From contig JBBPEB010000030.1 of NCBI GenBank assembly GCA_039096225.1, forward strand, positions 806,001 through 870,000: a stretch of 64,000 bases of DNA. The letters are read 5' to 3'. The position numbers and the translations under genes were made by a program. The notes beneath the pieces were generated by a model, which ran no database searches, was not told the DNA's origin, and worked only from the letters and a program-made list of their open reading frames with translations. Source of the DNA: Blastocystis sp. Blastoise. Its lineage: Eukaryota > Protista > Bigyra: Opalinata. Below, piece by piece: positions 9,311 through 57,269 of this stretch. Each line of letters begins with the position of its first letter. Positions within the stretch are counted from its first letter, which is position 1.

Positions 9311-9591
9311 CCTCCTTATCATGCTCCTCGTGTATTTTATAATATTCCTCAACCTAGAGTGTTTAATCCTATTACTTTATGTTCTTATAACATGCTAGCA
9401 GATATATATACATCTACTTCTCAATACCCTTATTGTCCACGATGGGCACTCATGTGGGACTATAGACGCGAACGACTCAGGAAAGAAATAGAATCCATTC
9501 ATACGGATATATTCTGCTTACAGGAAGTTCAAAAAGAAAGCTTTGATAATTTCTGGTTGAGTGAAATGAATCAACTCAATTATGATGGAAA

Positions 9592-9657
<66 letters not shown>

Positions 9658-9936
9658 TTATATATATATATATATATAATAGGTTTGCTCAAAAGTCACG
9701 TGCTGATGTTCAGGGGAGAATCGATGGGTGCGTCACTTTTTTTAATCGGGATAAATTTCAATGTGTTGGTGAATATAGTTTTTCATTTGATGAAGAAGTC
9801 GAACGATTTACTTCACTCACATCTGTATATATAATATATATATATATATATATAATATTTCTTTTTTTTTTAGTTATTCTATTTCATTCTTATACAATTA
9901 TATATTTTTATTTTTATCTCTTGTTTCTATCTATCC

Positions 9937-10004
<68 letters not shown>

Positions 10005-10937
10005 AGCAAAAGAGTAGAATGATACGTGGTAATATTGCTCAAGTATTACTATTAGATGTTCTCGATAATCAAAAAGTACCCTTTACTCGTATATGTATAT
10101 GTAATACTCATATATTTTGGAATCCTAAGTACATGGATGTGAAGTTATGGCAGGTACATCGTCTTATGAAGTATATCGATTCCCTTTGGACCAAGCATGT
10201 TGACCCCGTTATATTCTGTGGAGATTTCAATAGTGAACCGAGATCGGCAGTGTATATATATTCAATTATATTTATATATATTTACATGCTTTTCAAACAC
10301 TCTTCTTACTTTTTTTATTCATGATTTTTAAAAAATTGATATTTGTATAATAATAATAAATTGAATAATAATAATAATAAATTGAATAATAATACATAAT
10401 AATAATAATCATAATAATAATAATCATAATAATAATAATAATAATAATATATATATGTTATCCTCTCTAGATATGATTATATCTCGGAGGGATATGTGAC
10501 GTCGAATACAAAGGACGTGTCATACGACCCATTTCATATTCTTCCTCCTCTTCAAGACCTTCAACATGATATTAAATTCCAATCAGCTTATAAGACTATA
10601 CAAGGAAAAGAACCAGATTTCACTAATTATACAAGTATATATAATTATAGTACTATTCTTATTATACTCTGGATTCTTATATATACTTGTATACTTCATT
10701 ATAATCAAATATACATATAATATATACATAATAATAAATATATACCTTATATATATAGAGCAATATAGTGGATGTTTAGATTATATATGGTTTACACCTC
10801 TGAATCTTAGAGTTCTTGACGTTTCCCCTCTTCCAACTGTGTCTCAGATTCGGGAACACAAAGACACATTCATTCCCAATACGCAGTATCCGTCAGATCA
10901 TCTACCACTTATTGTAAAATTCGACTTTAACTTATAA
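8261..10937 (+). CDS. CCR4: CCR4-type EEP deadenylase with plant-like N-terminal Cys/His zinc finger, no LRR seen
   Basis: EEP motifs SYNMLADIY, DIFCLQEV, NTHIFW, FCGDFNSEP, FTNYT, LDYIWF, PSDHLPL. N-terminal CIDC...FCSTLCMCKNWKLHQ finger and YTPVSTDIGHMLK as in plant CCR4a/b. Confidence 0.9.
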
Positions 10938-11715
10938 TATATATATGTTTATTTATACAGATACTAGTTATATATTTTTTAAGTATTATCTAGTCATCTC
11001 TTTTCTATTCATTTATATATATATATTTTGAAAATAGTTTTTATTGTAATAATTATGTATATATAAATATATATGTATATTTTACTATTATTTCTTCCTT
11101 TTACATATCATCTTTTGATATTCCTAATATCTACTCTATTCCACTATTCATTTTGGGGAAATGTCTTATTATCTATTTGTATATCGTGACTTATTTTAAT
11201 TTTTGTTTTTGCATTATTCTGTTTTTCTGCATATTTTCACATTTGTACATTTCTTTTATTTCTTCATCTATTTATAGTATATCAAGATCATATCTGTTTC
11301 ATTTTTATCTATCTTCTTATATATACTTCGTTCTAACTATTATTCTATAGTGTTTTTTTCTCTTTTTATTTACTTTTACCTTTTATCTTTTTTTTTTTTT
11401 GGTAAAAATTCTTCATTTTTCTTCTTTTTTTCAGAGATATGAATATATATCTGACATCTTTTTGTGATTCTTATTATATAGATTATTAACTATTTTATAA
11501 AGTGATTTACGTTTCTATTGTTTTCACAGTGATCATATCTTGTTTAGAAATTCATGTGTTTTGTTTTTTATTATTTTATTTTTATTATTTATACGTTGGA
11601 AGATTTTTATAACTGTAGAATTAATATCGAATCTATCAACACTTCTAATTTATTATACCTTATCATCAATGCTTATGTATATCTTTAAAAGAAACAAATA
11701 AAAATTTATAATTAA

Positions 11716-12645
11716 ATGGATAACAATTTCTTCGTTACTGTTGATGCAGGTGGAACCAAAACTCATGCAGAAGCATTTCTTTTTAATGAGATATCTATCA
11801 AGTCTATTATAAAAGGCCCTGGAAATCTTGCTGTCAATTACAATGATGCCATTCAAAATATTCATGATTCCATTTCTGAATTAGTCACTAGCATAGATAA
11901 TAAAATGAAACTCAAATTTATAGTTATTGGATGTGCTGGGATCAGTGTAGTTCCTAATGTAATTGATATTCAAGATCAATTCTCTTCATTTTTTCATTGT
12001 TCTGTACTCATAATATCTGATATATTATTAGCACTCTATTCTATGGTTGAAAACACTTCATCATCAGCCATTTTCTCAATTGCAGGTACTGGCAGTGTTG
12101 CTATGTCTATTAAAAATATGAAAACAACTACAATCGGTGGTTGGGGTCATCTTCTTGGTGATGAGGGATCATCTTATGATATCGTTATTCAATTCTTAAA
12201 GCATTTTATTTATTCATATGACAGTGGAAATGAATTATCAACTTTACAAAAAGCGTTCATGAAATATGTAAATATAAACACACCGAATGATTTGAAAAAA
12301 ATTGTTTACAATCATTCAAAAGGAGACATTGCTCAATACTGTAAATTTCTATCAAATCAAAGTTTACAAGGAAATGAAGAATCTATAAGTTATTTTATTG
12401 AGGCTGGCAAATGTATAGGATCATTAATATATCGTCTTTACATACGAGAAAATATGGATTCTTCTTGCTATTTAGGAGTTGGTGGATCTCTTATAGAAAA
12501 TAATAAATACATGAAATCTGAAGTTGAAAGGTTTCTATTAGAGCATGGAATTCAGCAACCTTTGAATCTAGTGAACGAACACATTACACTTGGTGGTCTC
12601 CATTTTGTTAAATGCAATCATCCTTATCTTCTAAACATATTGTAA
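11716..12645 (+). CDS. BadF/BadG/BcrA/BcrD-family GlcNAc/MurNAc kinase (MurK-like), intronless, bacterial-type
   Basis: Uninterrupted 309-aa ORF with VDAGGTKT, GPGN, IGCAG, IAGTGS, GGWGHLLGDEGSSYDI and GGSL motifs (ASKHA/BadF sugar kinase). Lies directly upstream of murQ. Confidence 0.9.
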   Translation: MDNNFFVTVDAGGTKTHAEAFLFNEISIKSIIKGPGNLAVNYNDAIQNIHDSISELVTSIDNKMKLKFIVIGCAGISVVPNVIDIQDQFSSFFHCSVLIISDILLALYSMVENTSSSAIFSIAGTGSVAMSIKNMKTTTIGGWGHLLGDEGSSYDIVIQFLKHFIYSYDSGNELSTLQKAFMKYVNINTPNDLKKIVYNHSKGDIAQYCKFLSNQSLQGNEESISYFIEAGKCIGSLIYRLYIRENMDSSCYLGVGGSLIENNKYMKSEVERFLLEHGIQQPLNLVNEHITLGGLHFVKCNHPYLLNIL

Positions 12646-12765
12646 TAATAGTATTATCATTTTATATGTTAAATAAATCAATTGTTTTGTTAACAACTTT
12701 TAACCCAAATCTTTTTGCTATTTTAAAAATTTTCTTATACTTTTTTAGTTTCCTACCTTAAGAAT

Positions 12766-13680
12766 ATGTCTATTAATTTATCTAAAATTACTACTGAACA
12801 GCGTAATCAGAATACTAGTAATATTGATCAACTATCTACAGAAAATATATTGAAAGTGTTGAATCATGAAGATCAACAGGTACCATTGGCTGTATCAAAA
12901 GCAATTCCACAGATGGCTCCACTTGTAGATATGATTGTGAAAGCATTTCAACAAGGAGGTCGATTAATTTATGTAGGTTCTGGTACATCAGGTCGTCTTG
13001 GGGTTTTAGATGCTTCAGAATGTAAGCCAACATATAGTATTCCTGATGGGATGGTTCTTGGTATTATAGCAGGTGGTGATAAAGCATTACGTAATTCTAT
13101 TGAGAATGCAGAAGATAATAAAGAAGCAGCTGTCAAAGATTTGGATTTTTATAATATTTGTAATAAGGATGTTATTATTGGAATTACAGCGAGTGGTCGA
13201 ACTCCTTATCCAATAGGAGCTGTAGAATATGGAAAATCTCTTGGCTGTATAACTGGTTGTATAACGACAAGTGAGAATAGTGAGATTGCTTCTAAAGTAG
13301 ATTACCCAATAGAAGCTATAACAGGTTCTGAACCTATTACAGGATCTACAAGAATGAAATCAGGAACAGCACAAAAATTAATATTAAATATGTTGTCTAC
13401 TACTTGTATGATAAAATTAGGAAAAGTTTATGATAATTTGATGGTAGATGTACTTCCATTAAATAAGAAACTTATTATAAGATCTCAGAATATCATTAGT
13501 ACTATCACAGGTGTAAGTACAGTAGAAGCACAAGAAGCTATGAATAAATATAAAACTGTGAAGAAAAGTGTATTTGCATTAATAACAGGAGAAACAAATA
13601 TTAATGTGATTGATCAATGCCTAAATAATAATTATGGACATTTAAAAAATTCTATTCAAGATTATATGTCATCTCAATAA
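12766..13680 (+). CDS. murQ: N-acetylmuramic acid 6-phosphate etherase, intronless, bacterial-type
   Basis: 304-aa ORF with TEQRN, GRLIYVGSGTSGRLGVLDASECKPTY (first catalytic Glu), ENAED (second Glu), ITASGRTPY, ITGSTRMKSGTAQKLILNMLST and GKVYDNLMVDV. These are the diagnostic SIS etherase motifs. Confidence 0.95.
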   Translation: MSINLSKITTEQRNQNTSNIDQLSTENILKVLNHEDQQVPLAVSKAIPQMAPLVDMIVKAFQQGGRLIYVGSGTSGRLGVLDASECKPTYSIPDGMVLGIIAGGDKALRNSIENAEDNKEAAVKDLDFYNICNKDVIIGITASGRTPYPIGAVEYGKSLGCITGCITTSENSEIASKVDYPIEAITGSEPITGSTRMKSGTAQKLILNMLSTTCMIKLGKVYDNLMVDVLPLNKKLIIRSQNIISTITGVSTVEAQEAMNKYKTVKKSVFALITGETNINVIDQCLNNNYGHLKNSIQDYMSSQ

Positions 13681-14368
13681 TTAAATACTATCTATTATCT
13701 TTTTGTTTTGTTATATCAAATATATCTCAAGATGATTCATTTTTGATTGAAATACTAAGAAAACTCTTAGTTCTTTAAAAAATGATCTTTTATATATATA
13801 TAAGGAATTATATAATGATATATTCAAACAATTAATAGTAACAATTAAAACGGTTATAGCAACCAAAATAATCTATCAAACAAATATAATCAATCGAATT
13901 ATATAATGAGAGAAACAAGTGATAGTTAATAATTAATAAAAAAAGTAAAATTGAAAATAAAGATTAATAAACAAAGATAAAAAGAAGAAAAAAAAATAAA
14001 GATTAAAAAAAGAAGAGAATTTAATAAAGTGTGAGAGAGAACTACTATAATGTATAGAAAATAGCAATAAAAATGAAGGAAGCTATGTGAAAATAAAAGA
14101 GAACAAAGAAGACACACAATAATAGTAAAAACGTAGATAAATATAATTAATAAGAATGTATATATAATCCTAATGAATAAAATACAGTTAACAAATTATT
14201 AGAAAAACAGAAAATTCAATGAATGGTGTAGTATATATATAAAGTAATAGTAATAATACAATAAAAATAGAAGATATAAACTGAAAAAAGTTATTTTAAA
14301 TAATTTGATTTTTTTTTTATACAATAAATTATTTGTGTATAAACAAATATGTGTATATACATAAGTGT

Positions 14369-23641: not shown

Positions 23642-23868
23642 TTAATGAGCAAGTTCCTGAACAGTAGTGAAAGTTCTACCTTGTTTTGGCTTGACACCAT
23701 TAAAAAGATAACGAGGAACACCGTTTTCCCATAAGATATTAGCTCTTTCACGATTATTAAAGGTAATACTATAGTAATGTATGTAATAAATAATAAATAT
23801 AATAAAGAAATATACTTGGTTCCATCAGTGAATTCCATAGTTTTGGTATATCCTCTCTTATACCTATA

Positions 23869-23900
<32 letters not shown>

Positions 23901-24850
23901 TAATAATAATAATAATAATAAACATAAATATAATAATAAATAAATAAATAAATAAAAAACACCAAATAAATATACTTCCAATTATTGACTCCATCAGGAG
24001 AGTAGAAATGACCTCCAGACCAAACACCATCTTCAGAATGAGTTATAAAGTGATAACCAGTTTCATAATAAAAAGCATGGGCATCTTCATTAACACAATA
24101 ACCTTCATCCCAAGGATGATAGAGTACAGTTTTATTATGAAGATATTGAATTTCACTAGTATAATTTTGAGCAAAAGCAACACCTTGAGCTCTAATATCA
24201 CATTGAGAGTGACCATGATTATAACAATTAGTAAAATATAAATAGAATGAACCGTTAGGGAAGAAAATAGCAGAAGGATTACCAACTGGTCTCCAATCAG
24301 GATCAAATTCTTTCATTTTTTCTTCACCAACAAAAGGTTCAATGAAAGTCCATTCACCATTAAGATCTTTGGTATAAGCAATAGAGATTTCTCTTCTATT
24401 GAAAGGTTTCTTCCAACGAATGTAGAAAAGAACATAAGTTCCATCAGGAGCACGATAAATAGAAGGATTATGAGATTCAACATCACGAAGCATAGTCTTA
24501 TAAGTATAAGGACCTTGAGGATCAGTACTAATAGCATGAACAACAGTAGAATGGTTTTCCCAAGCATCTAAATCAAGATGATTTTCCATAACAGAAGTGA
24601 ATAAATGATAAAGACCATCTTCACCCTTGATAGCAGAACCACACCAAGAAGAATTATCTGCAGAACGAAAAGCAGCATATCTATTAGGATCTTGAGGAAG
24701 GAAATTAATCATAGAACAATCATCACCTTTAAACATCTTACCACAGATACAAGTATTATTTACACAACGACCAGCATAAGAACAATCTTCATTATTGTTA
24801 CAAGAAGCAAAAGCAATAGCTACTATGAAGCACAATAAAACAAATCTCAT
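23642..24850 (-). CDS. Secreted EGF-like + five-bladed beta-propeller glycoside hydrolase (GH43/clan-F-like), 3 exons
   Basis: Signal peptide MRFVLLCFIVAIAFA; EGF-like CNNNEDCSYAGRCVNNTCICGKMFKGDDC; motifs SSWCGS, GLYHLF, PQGPY, HNPSI, GNPSA, NEDAH and RERANILWENGVPRYLFNG; stop at 23642-23644. Confidence 0.75.
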
Positions 24851-26992: not shown

Positions 26993-30870
<3,878 letters not shown>

Positions 30871-33008
30871 TTATAGATCTCTATATTTATATTTTTTTTT
30901 CTCTATATTATTATTTTAATTCTTTTTTATTAATTTCATTAATTATCCCTATCTCATTAACTTTATATTTTTCTCTATTTATTCTCTTTTCATTTTTCCC
31001 TCCTATATTTAGCATCGTTTTCTCTTATACATATATTTTTTTTCATACTTATTTTCGTATTATTATATATCCCTTTATATTACTTTTCCTCTATATTATC
31101 CTTAAGCTTAAATTGGTAAGTTTCAATCAATTTATGATTGAAAACAGGTTCAATTCCTGTCTTAAGGTCGTTTATATAACTATTTTATGTATATATAGGT
31201 TTTAATATTCATATTGTATAAGATTTTCAAAAAATATATATTCAGAGAGGTGAAGATCAATTATGTTAATTACTATTTTTTTCTTTATATGTGTATTTAT
31301 TTAATCATTAAATGTATTAGTTGTATATAGATGATTCATAGAAACATTCAAAACAGTTTATTCAATACAAAAATATTCCAACAATTATCAATTACTTAAT
31401 TAAGTGTATTGTCGAACACAGAATCTTCTCAAAAGATTGTTCAGGAGATTTTATAATGTTTATACGTAAAATATTAGTTTAGTTCCAAAAAATAATTCTA
31501 TTTTTCAAAAATAGATTATCAAAAGATTCTGTGCAATTTTTTTTTCATATGATCAGTGTATCCTTGTACAGTAGAAAAAAATCATTTAAATACATTTTTG
31601 ACTTGATAAACAATAAATTAAGAATTTATTCTTGTTAAAAAACAAAATATTTTGAAAATAATACTAAAATCATACAGATGACTAATGAAACTATTCATTC
31701 ATTTACTCTTAACATGATTTAAGACAAGTCATAAAAATGGAGATTCTTTATATTTTATAATTTTTGATTAATTGATATCACTGTCATGTTTAAACTTCAT
31801 TTAGACACTAAATATGCAATATGAGACGTTTCTGTTATTATTGAAAATAAAATATATATTTGAAATAATTTTAGTTTCACTAAAAATCACTGAAGATGAT
31901 TAAACACGGTAAGTAGACAATGAATAAATCATGAATATAACGATTAATGAGATTAAACATTTTTTTGATAAAAAAGTGATTTTTGCATTTGTTTTATAGT
32001 AAACTATCAACACGATTCTGACTTTTCAATTAAAAATATACAAAATATTATTTTTGCTTATTCATATGCATATTTGATAGCTATGAGTCCTTAGTTGATA
32101 GAAAAAGTTGTTCTTGAGTAATTATAAAATAATAATTTGATTTGTTTTTGATATTATTGTAACAATAAACATTATTTTAACTGGAAAACACTCACTCTAT
32201 ACGTTTTGAGTTTATGAAGAGGTTTTAAAAGACTTTTACTTGATTACAATTGTTGACTTAATTGACTTTAAAATGTTTTTTGTTTCTTTTCAGTCATATT
32301 ATGATATTAAAATAATTGAAAATCTACACAAATAGATTAAAAAGTTGATATTTCATAACAATTTTGACTCTAGACCTTTTTTATCATCTTTCTCTTTATT
32401 TAATCATTTTATTGAAAGTATGTGACTCAAATTAATACTCTAAATGAAGATTCAGACAATCATTCTGAATTATATGAATCACTTTTGTTTTGGGATTAGA
32501 AGTCTCAGGGTCTTCTCTATAAGTCTGTATTATAGCCTAGGTTTATTTAAAAAATAAGTTATACTTACAAAGTGATACTAAGAATAATTTTGATAATTAA
32601 CTATAAAAATGACTCTTCTGTCGTCTAAACTAATTATAAAACATTATAATGATAAATAAATATATAATTCTTTAAAATAAAACATTTTTTATAGTATTAA
32701 TAATAATTAGGATAAATTGAAAATAACAATAACAATATCCATTTTCCTCATAGAAATAAAATTTCTCTTTCTCTTTTATTCTTAACCATTCATTTTATTT
32801 ATGATGAAGATTCTCTATATTTAGTAGATATGAGATTATTCATGTTTATTTTCATTATTTCAGCTATATCTTCTAAATTCCTATTACACCCTTTTATAAC
32901 AAAACAAAATCCTACATGACTTATCACATATTTATTTTATTATATCTTATATCATTATAATGATGTATTATTAAATTATTACTTTATTTCATATCATATG
33001 ATACTATT

Positions 33009-55100: not shown

Positions 55101-57269
55101 TTATATATTCTATTATATATTATATATTCTATTATATATTATATATTATATTATATATTATATTATCATATCCATTATATTGTTAGTTATTATATGTTTT
55201 TATAGCAGTAAATGTGAACCATGAAAGTATGTGCTTAGGTTTTGGTTTTTACCCTAGTGAAAGCGAGGAAGCTTGGATTTCAATTTTAACCCCCCTAAAG
55301 AAATTATTAAATACCTTTTATCCAAGAATTGATTTTACTTTCATGTCAGACCAAGCAAAGGGCATTAAAAGTGCTGTGAAGAATGTTTTCCCTGATAGTG
55401 CACATATCTTGTGCTTCTTCCATCTTCTTCAGGATTATTTAGCTATAGATCCTCAAACCAAAAGATACATTATAGATTGCTACAAATCAGATACTTTCTT
55501 CGAAGCTCAAGAAGTATCACAAAAAATAACAAATATTGAAATTAGAAATAAGATTATGGATGTTTGGCAGAACAATGAGAAGAGTCAAAGTCAGTACAAA
55601 AACATATGTAGATGGTATATATCATCTAGTGTAGCAGAAAGCTACAACAGAATTTTGAAGAAATACCGTAATCTTCCCCTTCATATTATGTTCATTTCAA
55701 TTTATAATTATGGTCTCAATAAGCAAATAGCCATTATGCAGAACATTCCAAAAGATAAACTATTATTACCTTACTTCGAAAAAATATATACAAAAATATG
55801 TCAAGAGAAATACCATATAACCGATATAAACAAAGGAATTAGTGCATATATTAACGACGGTGTAGAATATGAAGTGGATTTATCACTTATGAAGTGCTCC
55901 TGCAAAGAATTTCAGAATAAGAATACACCATGTAAGCATGCCATTATTTTAATAAAACACTTGTTAAACACCAAAACAATTGATGATAAGATCCTTCCTC
56001 CAATATTGAAGAGTATAAATAACAATTTATATATCTCTCAATATGCAAATTATAAGCCAAAGTATATATTATTTATTGCTATAAATATTAGAATTATTTC
56101 ATTATTATATTATATTTTTAATTCTTATCCTTATTGTATTCATCATATAAACTATTTATTACATGTAATAATATAATTTTTAAATAAATACTTTTATTGA
56201 TACTTATTGTTCATCATATATACTATTTATTACATGTAATAATATAATTTTTAAATAAATACTTTTATTAATACTTATAGTATACATCATGATTTATATT
56301 TATAATGATGTTATATTTAACTTTTCTTATAGTTTATTATATTAATATATAAATATTAGTTTACATTTTATAAAGCTTTTTTTTTTCTGTATATTTTAAT
56401 ATAATATTTATTTAATACTCTGGATAAGATATATTACTATTTTATTTTTTAAGATAAAAGAATATTGATTTTATATTCTATATTATATATATATAGTTGT
56501 TTTATTATTTTTTTAATATGTATAATACACATTCTTTATAGTAAATTTTTAATGATTTTTTAATATAATATGCATATTGACATATGTATTATATATGTTA
56601 TTTATTATAAAAAAATTTCTGTAAATTTATTTCCTATATGATTCTAATTTATAATTTGTTTTTATATATCTATTTAGAAATATAATTTCTCATTATATAT
56701 ACTTATTTGTTTATAGAAAACTAATCTTATTAAATAAATTATAAGTTATTTATTTTTATTGTGAATAGAATCATATATGTATTATTATTCAAATATTCTT
56801 TAATTATATTTTTATAATCATATATATATATATATATATATATAATCCCATTATTTATTCATTATATTTGCAATCAATTAATAATACTATTATTCCATTT
56901 TATATTCATTTCACAATATTTTCTATATATATTATTATCGTAGTTTATTTTTAATCTATACATATATAATATATATCATATGGATTAGTTATATTAATAT
57001 CTATATACATAGTAATAAGAATATATTGTATAACATCATTTTATAATATCTATATCCATAGGTTACTTGATCAATCTGTTCTGGAATCTAATCCACATGT
57101 AAAAATCCTAAAACCATCGTATGCTCTACAATCAAGAGGGAAACCACAAGTGAACAGAATGAAACGAAAAAGTGAAGAAAGCATGACCAAAAGAAAAAGA
57201 AAGGTACCTTATGTTAAAAGAGCAGTTCCATATGAAGATCAGATTGGAATTCACGACTTTAAGTTTTAA
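52196..57269 (+). mobile_element. Mutator/MULE transposase gene, 6 exons, continuous ORF
   Basis: WRKY/GCM1-like CPIMECNF...HFHNH; DDE residues in FLDGT, MSDQAKG and VAESYN; CFFH; SWIM finger CSCKEFQNKNTPCKH; basic C-terminus. All five GT-AG junctions are in frame from ATG 52196 to TAA 57267-57269. No TIRs found. Confidence 0.9.
53340..53845 (+). repeat. Coding Asn/Thr minisatellite inside the transposase
   Basis: Repeated NTNNGYNSITNNN and NNDTSNT units in ORF 52878..53906. Confidence 0.85.

What the first reader, a model, noticed from the sequence alone, without database searches (positions are those of the whole stretch)
11716..13680. Operon-like MurK-MurQ module for salvaging the peptidoglycan sugar MurNAc in a eukaryotic chromosome
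Seen: two co-oriented, intronless ORFs 120 bp apart between heavily spliced genes, in a window where every other gene has introns. They encode a BadF-family amino-sugar kinase and a MurQ etherase with both catalytic Glu motifs intact. Known: bacterial MurK-type kinases (e.g. Clostridium acetobutylicum, Tannerella forsythia) make MurNAc-6P, and MurQ cleaves it to GlcNAc-6P + D-lactate, so the two are consecutive steps on a bacteria-specific sugar. Inference: a single lateral transfer of an operon fragment lets this protist use cell-wall sugar from bacteria as a carbon/nitrogen source, and it may consume muropeptide-derived MurNAc in a gut. Caveat: animal NAGK/GCKR and some fungal proteins are related, so the origin needs a phylogeny.
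Basis: partly seen in the sequence, partly recalled or inferred. Interest (0 to 1): 0.92.

Follow-up and report, generated by a model that had tools for sequence, protein, structure and literature searches.

The report
Bacterial MurNAc kinase–etherase pair in Blastocystis
A tortoise-gut Blastocystis chromosome carries two adjacent intronless genes of bacterial origin, a sugar kinase and the MurQ etherase, which together would turn the bacterial cell-wall sugar MurNAc into GlcNAc-6-phosphate; this is a real lateral transfer, but of a kind already reported in other protists.

Summary
ORF1 (11716-12645, +, 309 aa) is a BadF/BadG-type ASKHA sugar kinase. ORF2 (12766-13680, +, 304 aa) is a full-length MurQ MurNAc-6P etherase scoring above NCBIfam's equivalog cut-off. 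The two ORFs are 120 bp apart and lie between intron-split eukaryotic genes on a 1.12 Mb contig.

The genome (33.3 Mb, 23% GC) is almost certainly the tortoise-gut Blastocystis sp. Rus-B/"Blastoise" of Lind et al. 2025.

MurQ nests with strong support inside a clade of mostly wall-less or uncultured Bacilli (Acholeplasmataceae, Izemoplasmatales, Haloplasma, Bacilli MAGs). In those bacteria a BadF kinase lies directly upstream of murQ, or one gene away. The best hits of both proteins sit on one bacterial contig.

The kinase is very divergent (at most 38% identity to anything in 15 billion proteins), and its exact place in the tree is unresolved. A shared donor is compatible with the data but not proven.

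Both proteins keep their catalytic residues. The most likely reading is a single transfer of a kinase-murQ operon fragment that gives cytosolic MurNAc salvage.

MurQ transfers to protists and ants are already published, so I rate the novelty as moderate. The scan's own notes hold this same stretch twice; I found no earlier report on other DNA.

The parts
11716..12645 (+). Intronless CDS of a BadF/BadG-type (COG2971, CaMurK-like) ASKHA sugar kinase, 309 aa, with no N-terminal extension; predicted MurNAc (possibly also GlcNAc) 6-kinase.
   Evidence: ORF. PF01869 at 61 bits. Best solved relative is 8zo3, the MurNAc/GlcNAc kinase, E 2.3e-23. It keeps 34 of 39 family-conserved columns, including D10-GGTKT, catalytic D102, G124-TGS and G141-GWGHLLGDEGS. 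Single copy, and the only BadF-type kinase found in the genome.
12646..12765 (+). 120-bp AT-rich spacer between the two genes. The equivalent spacing is -17 to +22 bp in most directly adjacent bacterial pairs compared.
   Evidence: Sequence. Bacterial spacings and an overlapping pair. The median intergenic length in tortoise Blastocystis is 645-719 bp (PMC12129017).
12766..13680 (+). [quoted passage not shown]
   Evidence: TIGR00274 at 345 bits, above the 302 cut-off. Matches 4lzj/1nri H. influenzae MurQ at E 1e-81 over residues 4-297. E85 and E116 are invariant. 56 of 58 conserved columns are kept. Single copy in the genome.
10938..11715 (.). 778-bp non-coding host-type flank between the stop of the CCR4-type gene and the kinase ATG; it holds no relic of other donor-operon genes.
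   Evidence: Sequence. tblastn of all ORFs from nine donor-like loci gave nothing outside the two CDS at E < 0.1.
13681..14368 (.). 688-bp non-coding host-type flank between the murQ stop and the end of the convergent minus-strand gene; no operon relics.
9380..10937 (+). Context only: 3' exons of an intron-split CCR4-type Exo_endo_phos nuclease gene. This shows the upstream flank is eukaryotic.
   Evidence: Pfam profile positions 1-53, 95-162 and 194-225 fall in three separate ORF pieces divided by (TA)n-rich sequence.

Best explanation
An ancestor of this tortoise-gut Blastocystis took up one piece of a peptidoglycan-sugar utilisation operon from a Bacillota bacterium. The donor was most likely a wall-less or uncultured Bacilli lineage related to Acholeplasmataceae, Izemoplasmatales or Haloplasma. 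The piece carried the adjacent genes for a BadF-type sugar kinase and for MurQ, and it inserted between a CCR4-type nuclease gene and a dehydrogenase-like gene. Both genes stayed intact and intronless, and a 120-bp spacer now separates them. In the cytosol the kinase is predicted to phosphorylate free MurNAc (perhaps GlcNAc too) at O6 using ATP. MurQ then removes the D-lactyl ether through its two catalytic glutamates, giving GlcNAc-6-phosphate and D-lactate. GlcNAc-6P can enter UDP-GlcNAc synthesis directly, or be deacetylated by the host's own eukaryote-type NagA. Shown here: gene identity, intact catalytic residues, bacterial ancestry of MurQ, operon-type adjacency in relatives, and physical embedding in eukaryotic sequence. 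Inferred: a single transfer event, MurNAc as the kinase's substrate, expression, and where the MurNAc comes from (probably free MurNAc or muropeptide breakdown products released by gut bacteria, taken up by an unidentified carrier).
For: Gene identity. MurQ phylogeny (LG+C20+F+G4, careful search): the window protein lies inside a 100/96 clade of 39 mollicute-like Bacilli sequences and is sister (98/80) to an 18-row subclade containing Haloplasma and Bacilli MAGs (the quick tree agrees at 99). Adjacency in the closest bacteria: the kinase lies directly upstream of murQ on the same strand in an Izemoplasmatales MAG (4 bp gap), a Firmicutes MAG and an Acholeplasmataceae MAG, and the order is kinase-AnmK-murQ in L001 and L023. 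The pair overlaps by 4 bp in L107. Shared contig: the best exhaustive hit for the kinase (P0417, 164 bits out of 1.84 billion representatives) lies 1.1 kb from P0009, a MurQ 60% identical to the window's, in one operon: DUF624-NamZ-GH3/MupG-kinase-AnmK-MurQ-hydrolase-ETF-FAD oxidase. Kinase phylogeny: it groups with these murQ-linked kinases at 96/88 in one sampling. Functional coupling: natural kinase-AnmK and GH3-MupG-kinase fusions exist. Constraint: the kinase keeps 34/39 and MurQ 56/58 conserved columns despite long branches. Integration: both genes sit at position 817-819 kb of a 1.12 Mb contig, have intron-split neighbours, flanks of 778 and 688 bp close to the published 645-719 bp median intergenic length, and are single copy. 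Downstream step: the host has a eukaryote-type NagA (348 bits to human AMDHD2 7nut against 198 to the B. subtilis enzyme). Route to the substrate: I found no AnmK, and eukaryotes are not known to have a PTS, so a kinase is the only visible route to MurNAc-6P. Background from the genome paper: HGT is common in this lineage, and more than 85% of its bacterial-like genes are polyadenylated transcripts (PMC12129017).
Against: The kinase's position is unstable. With denser sampling it pairs with a long-branch bacterial sequence (P0436) and falls outside the clade that holds the partners of the closest MurQs (95/98). AU tests reject neither 'with Clostridium' (p 0.067) nor 'with the murQ-linked clade' (p 0.115). 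The partner MurQ of the kinase closest on the tree (P0137, 37% identity) is only 45% identical to the window's MurQ. Base composition cannot separate host from donor: GC3 is 0.14-0.20 in the two genes, 0.12-0.16 in host genes and 0.10-0.14 in the Izemoplasmatales locus. I found no lysozyme (GH22/24/25), Amidase_2 or Amidase_3, NamZ, AnmK, NagB-type deaminase or FAD-type D-LDH in the genome, and no MurNAc transporter is known, so both supply and downstream use are incomplete. In PTS/MupG-type operons the homologous kinase may act on GlcNAc rather than MurNAc. The pair is not among the tortoise-lineage transfers listed by Lind et al., whose screen required presence in more than one genome. It may therefore be strain-specific, or it may have failed their filters.
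Confidence: 0.68

Rival explanations
1. The genes are real and laterally acquired, but the module does not salvage MurNAc. Either the kinase is a GlcNAc kinase (the only BadF/NAGK-type kinase in the genome) and MurQ is idle or acts on another substrate, or the pair is a recent, poorly expressed and nearly neutral insertion.
For: Homologous kinases in PTS/MupG operons could serve GlcNAc released by MupG. C. acetobutylicum MurK, the closest characterised enzyme, uses both sugars (8zo3 name; PMC10465942). I found no transporter and no enzyme that releases MurNAc in the genome. The pair is not reported among the shared, expressed transfers of the lineage.
Against: MurQ keeps 56 of 58 near-invariant columns and both catalytic Glu residues after a long branch (0.87 substitutions per site), which implies selection on etherase activity. 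MurNAc-6P is MurQ's only known substrate, and the neighbouring kinase is the only visible way to make it. The kinase has glycines at the GGWG position, where bulky residues would clash with the lactyl ether in the T. forsythia MurK analysis.
Confidence: 0.15
2. The kinase and murQ arrived in two independent transfers from different bacteria and happen to lie side by side.
For: The kinase falls outside the clade of the MurQ relatives' partners in the denser tree. Its highest pairwise identity is to Clostridium (38%), while MurQ's is to Bacilli MAGs (63%).
Against: The two genes have the same order, the same strand and only 120 bp between them, in a genome with a median intergenic distance of about 700 bp. 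That is exactly the operon arrangement seen in bacteria. AU testing does not reject placing the kinase with the murQ-linked clade (p 0.115). The best exhaustive kinase hit shares a contig with a top MurQ hit. The kinase is a long branch, and long branches are prone to misplacement.
Confidence: 0.07
3. Bacterial contamination, or a chimeric join in the assembly.
For: The cultures were xenic and came from gut samples (PMC12129017). The genes are intronless and bacterial-like. I could not examine reads. No orthologue from a sister strain was seen in any database.
Against: Only these two genes are bacterial-like. They are embedded 817 kb into a 1.12 Mb contig, with about 700 bp of (TA)n-rich non-coding host-type DNA and intron-split eukaryotic genes on both sides, and no other bacterial ORFs nearby. 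No known bacterium encodes proteins closer than 63% (MurQ) or 38% (kinase). The spacer is 120 bp rather than the near-zero or overlapping spacing typical of bacterial operons. The authors removed non-eukaryotic sequence from their assemblies.
Confidence: 0.05
4. The genes are vertically inherited eukaryotic genes of NAGK/GKRP type.
For: Animal NAGK and GKRP belong to the same superfamilies. An active GKRP-type etherase exists in Naegleria (bioRxiv 10.64898/2026.05.08.723886).
Against: GKRP matches only 53-73 bits over part of the protein, and human NAGK matches at E 7e-9, against 277 bits for bacterial MurQ and E 2e-23 for bacterial MurK. All 120 best hits of each protein that carry a name are bacterial. 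MurQ is nested inside Bacilli. The architecture is the single-SIS 304-aa bacterial type, not the roughly 620-aa GKRP type.
Confidence: 0.01

Closest known systems
Bacterial MurK-MurQ (murTKQ-type) MurNAc catabolic modules: C. acetobutylicum MurK (PDB 8zo3; Reith et al. 2011), E. coli and H. influenzae MurQ (4lzj/1nri), and the NamZ-NagZ-kinase-MurQ operons of Izemoplasmatales/Acholeplasmataceae MAGs
   Same: The same two consecutive enzymes, in the same gene order and on the same strand. MurQ is 60-63% identical to the closest bacterial proteins. The catalytic Glu pair and the ASKHA motifs are kept.
   Different: The pair sits in a eukaryotic chromosome, with a 120-bp spacer rather than the near-zero or overlapping spacing of most adjacent bacterial pairs compared. 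It lacks the accompanying transporter, NamZ, NagZ/MupG, AnmK and D-lactate utilisation genes. The kinase is only 30-38% identical to any bacterial member. T. forsythia MurK is only a remote relative (E 0.003).
MurQ-type etherase genes acquired by other eukaryotes: Bodo saltans, Neobodo and Hemistasia (PMC7052976), Trepomonas (PMC7762791), anaerobic APM ciliates (PMC13198582), and Camponotini ants from Spiroplasma/Mollicutes (PMC13320244)
   Same: A bacterial single-domain MurQ transferred into a eukaryote that lives among bacteria, and interpreted as a way to use bacterial cell-wall sugar. The donor in ants is also a Mollicutes-type lineage.
   Different: Here a kinase gene lies next to murQ in bacterial operon order. 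None of the passages I read in those papers describe a linked kinase. The recipient is Blastocystis, for which I found no report of MurQ.
GKRP-type etherase of Naegleria gruberi and animal GKRP; animal NAGK
   Same: The same SIS/etherase and BadF/NAGK superfamilies. Human NAGK phosphorylates the MurNAc moiety of muramyl peptides (PMC9477735, title and abstract).
   Different: GKRP is a duplicated two-SIS protein of about 620 aa. The window protein is a 304-aa bacterial-type MurQ and is much closer to bacterial enzymes.
Published bacterial-to-Blastocystis transfers (Eme et al. 2017; Lind et al. 2025, PMC12129017)
   Same: The same recipient lineage and the same setting of gut-bacterial donors. 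Tortoise isolates have lineage-specific transfers of carbohydrate-active genes.
   Different: The published tortoise-specific list is rhamnosidase, GH154, two GNATs, a cold-shock protein and SMI1/KNR4. It does not include this pair, and no two-gene operon fragment is described.

Membership tests
[quoted passage not shown] | Whole-protein score above the curated equivalog cut-off, aligned end to end | tested here: met
   345 bits against a cut-off of 302, residues 8-297 on profile positions 1-290; NF003915 scores 381 bits.
[quoted passage not shown] | Two catalytic glutamates (E. coli Glu83/Glu114; this numbering is recalled from Hadi et al. 2008 and was not checked here) | tested here: met
   E85 (LDASEC) and E116 (NAEDN) are invariant in 24 sequences and conserved in at least 95% of 71 others. 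They align with the equivalent residues of H. influenzae MurQ 4lzj.
[quoted passage not shown] | Cleaves MurNAc-6P to GlcNAc-6P and D-lactate | not testable with these tools
   This needs the coupled D-lactate assay on recombinant protein.
CaMurK-type MurNAc/GlcNAc kinase (BadF/BadG/BcrA/BcrD, PF01869) | Pfam family membership and ASKHA phosphate, catalytic-Asp and adenosine motifs | tested here: met
   PF01869 at 61 bits, above the 31.5 cut-off. D10-GGTKT, D102, GTGS124-127, GGWGHLLGDEGS141-152, G257 and G293 are kept.
CaMurK-type MurNAc/GlcNAc kinase (BadF/BadG/BcrA/BcrD, PF01869) | Closest characterised relative is a MurNAc kinase | tested here: met
   [quoted passage not shown] Next come S. 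tokodaii hexokinase at 3e-12 and human NAGK at 7e-9.
CaMurK-type MurNAc/GlcNAc kinase (BadF/BadG/BcrA/BcrD, PF01869) | Genomic linkage to murQ and other MurNAc genes | tested here: met
   It is adjacent to murQ in the window. Relatives are adjacent to murQ, AnmK, MupG or NamZ or fused to AnmK or GH3-MupG.
CaMurK-type MurNAc/GlcNAc kinase (BadF/BadG/BcrA/BcrD, PF01869) | Phosphorylates MurNAc at O6 | not testable with these tools
   Sequence cannot separate MurNAc from GlcNAc specificity. The small residues (S101 before the catalytic Asp; GGWG) are compatible with room for the lactyl ether.
NagK_SO3507 GlcNAc kinase (NF046058 equivalog) | Score above the curated cut-off | tested here: not met
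   77 bits against a cut-off of 370, so it is not a member of that equivalog.
Bacterium-to-eukaryote lateral gene transfer | Nested within a bacterial clade with support, and no closer eukaryotic homologues | tested here: met
   MurQ: 100/96 clade and 98/80 sister relation. Kinase: every hit that carries a name or whose contig I examined is bacterial, but its clade is unresolved.
Bacterium-to-eukaryote lateral gene transfer | Physically integrated between eukaryotic genes, confirmed by spanning reads | tested here: inconclusive
   The sequence context is eukaryotic on both sides.
Bacterium-to-eukaryote lateral gene transfer | Expressed as polyadenylated mRNA | not testable with these tools
   Only the genome paper's general figure is available: more than 85% of high-alien-index genes are expressed.
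Single operon-fragment co-transfer | Both genes trace to the same donor lineage, and that lineage has the same adjacency | tested here: inconclusive
   Adjacency and the shared contig are met. Kinase placement is 96/88 with the murQ-linked clade but outside it. AU p is 0.115 for the shared-clade constraint.

The most novel reading that the evidence does not exclude
The pair is a still-coupled relic operon working in a eukaryote: co-transcribed or tightly co-regulated across the 120-bp spacer. It would let a non-phagocytic gut protist take up and consume free MurNAc or muropeptide breakdown products shed by the microbiota. Blastocystis would then be a sink for the peptidoglycan fragments that host NOD-type sensors read.
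Probability: 0.1. Interest if true: 0.7.

Novelty: new member of a known kind. Interest (0 to 1): 0.45.

Why it matters
If the pair is active, this Blastocystis lineage can process a sugar made only by bacteria. That adds a direct metabolic link between a very common gut eukaryote and bacterial cell-wall turnover.

The pair would also be an example of two functionally consecutive genes entering a eukaryote together in operon order.

The likely donors are wall-less Bacilli that themselves scavenge peptidoglycan from neighbours, so a scavenging trait may have passed from one cell-wall-free gut resident to another.

The practical value is modest. The finding extends a growing list of MurQ transfers into protists and insects, and it gives a clean, testable two-enzyme system.

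Tried and rejected

3'-end signal. I tested a Blastocystis-style signal. An 11-mer, TTGTTTTGTTA, lies 27-41 nt after both stop codons. The TGTTT(T)GTT motif follows only 1 of 6 distinct host gene ends that I checked. Lind et al. also report no enrichment of the DGE motif in tortoise isolates. I rejected it as evidence of domestication.

Base composition. It cannot separate host from donor.

Operon relics. A search for remains of other donor-operon genes in the flanks found nothing.

Neighbouring dehydrogenase. I considered the downstream dehydrogenase-like gene as a D-lactate dehydrogenase partner. Its exon fragments look like a beta-hydroxyacid dehydrogenase fold (my reading) and gave no Pfam hit, so I dropped the idea.

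Host identification. The actin-against-PDB ranking and the contig ends were uninformative. The HSP70 cluster look-up solved it.

Closer relatives. Searches for closer relatives or orthologues found nothing closer than 63% (MurQ) or 38% (kinase). These were the 5.8-billion-protein word search, the exhaustive 1.84-billion-representative search and JGI metagenome contigs.

Pairing with P0436. The pairing of the kinase with P0436 in the tree is probably long-branch attraction, because P0436 is an ordinary bacterial PTS-MupG-kinase-AnmK gene.

Catalytic residue numbering. A literature search for the MurQ catalytic residue numbers found nothing usable.
Full report
**Observation**

The window holds two uninterrupted, co-oriented ORFs at exactly the stated coordinates: 11716-12645 (309 aa) and 12766-13680 (304 aa), with 120 bp between them.
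- ORF1 matches PF01869, the BadF/BadG/BcrA/BcrD ATPase family, at 61 bits.
- ORF2 matches the MurQ equivalog TIGR00274 at 345 bits, above its 302-bit cut-off, and aligns end to end with H. influenzae MurQ (E 1e-81).
- The upstream gene is a CCR4-type Exo_endo_phos nuclease. Its Pfam profile is spread over at least three ORF pieces separated by (TA)n-rich sequence.
- The downstream minus-strand gene is also fragmented.
- In DNA of 23% GC, a stop codon is expected about every 11 codons, so two open frames of more than 300 codons are not chance.

**Host**

- The genome is 33.34 Mb in 34 contigs, and the window lies at 806-870 kb of a 1.12 Mb contig.
- It has a strong [FeFe]-hydrogenase match and no light-harvesting protein genes.
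- An intronless HSP70 from the genome falls in a 90%-identity cluster with KAK8807325.1 of 'Blastocystis sp. Blastoise', to which it is 99% identical.
- Size, contig number and GC match Blastocystis sp. Rus-B from a Russian tortoise (33 scaffolds, 33.3 Mb, 23.1% GC) in Lind et al., Genome Res 2025 (PMC12129017).
- That paper reports a median intergenic length of 645-719 bp in tortoise isolates and frequent HGT from gut bacteria. [quoted passage not shown]
- Its list of six tortoise-specific transfers does not include these genes. The words MurQ, muramic, peptidoglycan, etherase and kinase do not occur in its main text.

**Origin of MurQ**

- Among 5.8 billion proteins, the best non-self hits are 55-63% identical. 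Every named one is bacterial: Bacilli MAGs, Acholeplasmataceae, Izemoplasmatales, Haloplasma.
- GKRP structures reach only 53-73 bits.
- In a careful ML tree (LG+C20+F+G4, 72 rows), the window protein lies inside a 100/96-supported clade of 39 such sequences. It is sister (98/80) to an 18-row subclade. A 129-row quick tree agrees.
- The terminal branch is about twice the median. The transfer is therefore either not recent, or the true donor has not been sampled.

**Origin of the kinase**

- It is much more divergent. It reaches at most 38% identity in the word search. An exhaustive HMMER pass over 1.84 billion representatives gave nothing closer: 164 bits and 32-38% identity.
- Its closest solved relative is the C. 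acetobutylicum MurNAc/GlcNAc kinase 8zo3 (E 2e-23). The T. forsythia MurK/K1058 structures are only remote relatives (E 0.003).
- With 67 rows and a distant outgroup, it joins the kinases that sit next to murQ in Izemoplasmatales, Acholeplasmataceae, Haloplasma and Bacilli MAGs, at 96/88 support.
- An AU test of the alternative, grouping with Clostridium (the best BLAST hits), gave p = 0.067.
- After I added the best exhaustive hits, it pairs with a long-branch bacterial sequence, P0436. It then falls outside that clade, which is separated at 95/98. Forcing it together with the clade costs 6.4 lnL units, p-AU 0.115.
- I therefore treat the kinase's exact origin as unresolved within Bacillota kinases of MurNAc loci. 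It is compatible with the MurQ donor, but this is not demonstrated.

**Adjacency**

Among 81 bacterial murQ loci, 24 carry a homologue of the window kinase within the fetched flanks (up to 10 kb).
- In the loci whose MurQ is closest to the window's, the kinase is immediately upstream on the same strand. The pair is 4 bp apart in the Izemoplasmatales MAG and overlaps in the Acholeplasmataceae and Firmicutes MAGs.
- In L001 and L023 the two are separated only by AnmK.
- The kinase closest on the tree (P0137) overlaps its murQ by 4 bp, although that MurQ is only 45% identical to the window's.
- The best exhaustive kinase hit, P0417, lies in one operon with P0009, a MurQ 60% identical to the window's. 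The operon order is DUF624-NamZ-GH3/MupG-kinase-AnmK-MurQ-hydrolase-ETF-FAD oxidase.
- The Izemoplasmatales operon reads ABC permeases-DUF624-NamZ-GH3-kinase-MurQ.
- Natural kinase-AnmK and GH3-MupG-kinase fusions exist.

These operons are built for feeding on peptidoglycan sugars. Several of the carriers belong to lineages regarded as wall-less (my own knowledge). The same order, the same strand and a spacer six times shorter than the host's median intergenic distance make a single transfer of an operon fragment the simplest account.

**Integrity and integration**

- MurQ keeps 56 of 58 columns that are at least 95% conserved. These include E85 and E116, which correspond to E. coli Glu83/Glu114 by my recollection of Hadi et al. 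2008.
- The kinase keeps 34 of 39 columns that are at least 85% conserved, a number within the range of bona fide bacterial members. The retained positions include all ASKHA motifs and the catalytic Asp.
- Neither protein has an N-terminal extension, so both are predicted to be cytosolic.
- Both genes are single copy.
- The flanks are 778 and 688 bp of host-type non-coding DNA and hold no relic of other operon genes.
- Codon GC3 matches the host but equally matches AT-rich donors, so it does not discriminate.

**Pathway context in the genome**

- Present: a eukaryote-type NagA, many GH20 hexosaminidase loci, a few GH3 genes, an intron-bearing ROK kinase and one D-2-hydroxyacid dehydrogenase-family gene.
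- Not found: a NagB-type deaminase (the only PF01182 gene is 6-phosphogluconolactonase), and GH22, GH24 or GH25 lysozymes. Also not found were Amidase_2 or Amidase_3, NamZ, AnmK and FAD-type D-LDH. The GH22 search lacked a working positive control, and exon-wise searches can miss genes.
- The likely reading is salvage of free MurNAc into GlcNAc-6P, and from there into UDP-GlcNAc. Self-sufficient digestion of cell walls for carbon and nitrogen is less likely.
- How MurNAc is released and how it enters the cell remain unknown.

**Comparison with what is known**

- Bacterial-type MurNAc-6P etherases have been reported in free-living euglenozoans, and an etherase gene is noted in Naegleria (PMC7052976; the Naegleria enzyme is GKRP-type). 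They are also reported in Trepomonas (PMC7762791) and in anaerobic ciliates, together with anmK and NamZ (PMC13198582). In Camponotini ants the gene came from Mollicutes (PMC13320244).
- HGT into Blastocystis is well documented.
- What appears to be new is the recipient and the retained kinase-murQ adjacency.
- I therefore class this as a new member of a known kind, with moderate interest.

Noticed in passing
window 27001-31000: A 4-kb stretch with extreme strand asymmetry (GC skew -0.77 to -0.92, AT skew about -0.55) that contains long plus-strand ORFs. It lies inside the region another note calls a CACTA/CMC transposon.
   Followed up: no
window 23864-24850 (-): A 327-aa ORF with a weak EGF-like match followed by a sub-threshold GH43 match (26.5 bits against a cut-off of 32.2). 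It may be one of the plant-fibre enzymes that Lind et al. report as expanded in tortoise Blastocystis.
   Followed up: partly
window 55214-56176 (+): An ORF with MULE transposase and SWIM zinc-finger domains, which points to a Mutator-like element.
   Followed up: partly
window 12682-12692 and 13703-13713: The same 11-mer, TTGTTTTGTTA, lies 27-41 nt after the stop codons of both transferred genes. The TGTTT(T)GTT motif is rare in the window (6 plus-strand and 3 minus-strand hits for TGTTTTGTT), but it is not a general feature of host gene ends.
   Followed up: partly
L018 (ENA ERZ8810629 NODE_5781): A metagenome contig carries a Blastocystis-type HSP70, 90% identical to this genome's, directly beside bacterial-looking genes (Spore_YtfJ, ribosomal L28, HD domain). 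This may be a chimeric metagenome assembly.
   Followed up: no
G000 C25:695280-697094, C16:1451521-1453335, C16:1552281-1554095, C4/C8, C33 (x2), C1/C21: HSP70-family genes occur as sets with identical HMM scores on different contigs or twice on one contig, which suggests recent segmental duplications or retained haplotypes.
   Followed up: no
L112 8727-10915 and L108 9407-12798: In the bacterial operons closest to the window pair, ETF alpha/beta genes and an FAD-linked oxidase gene lie downstream in the same gene cluster (after murQ and a hydrolase in L112). This looks like a D-lactate utilisation set. The Blastocystis genome showed no FAD-oxidase_C homologue.
   Followed up: partly
G000 C19:377485-378400 (L104): An intron-bearing ROK-family sugar kinase with a CxCGxxGC zinc motif. 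Together with the window kinase, it is one of the few candidate amino-sugar kinases in the genome.
   Followed up: partly
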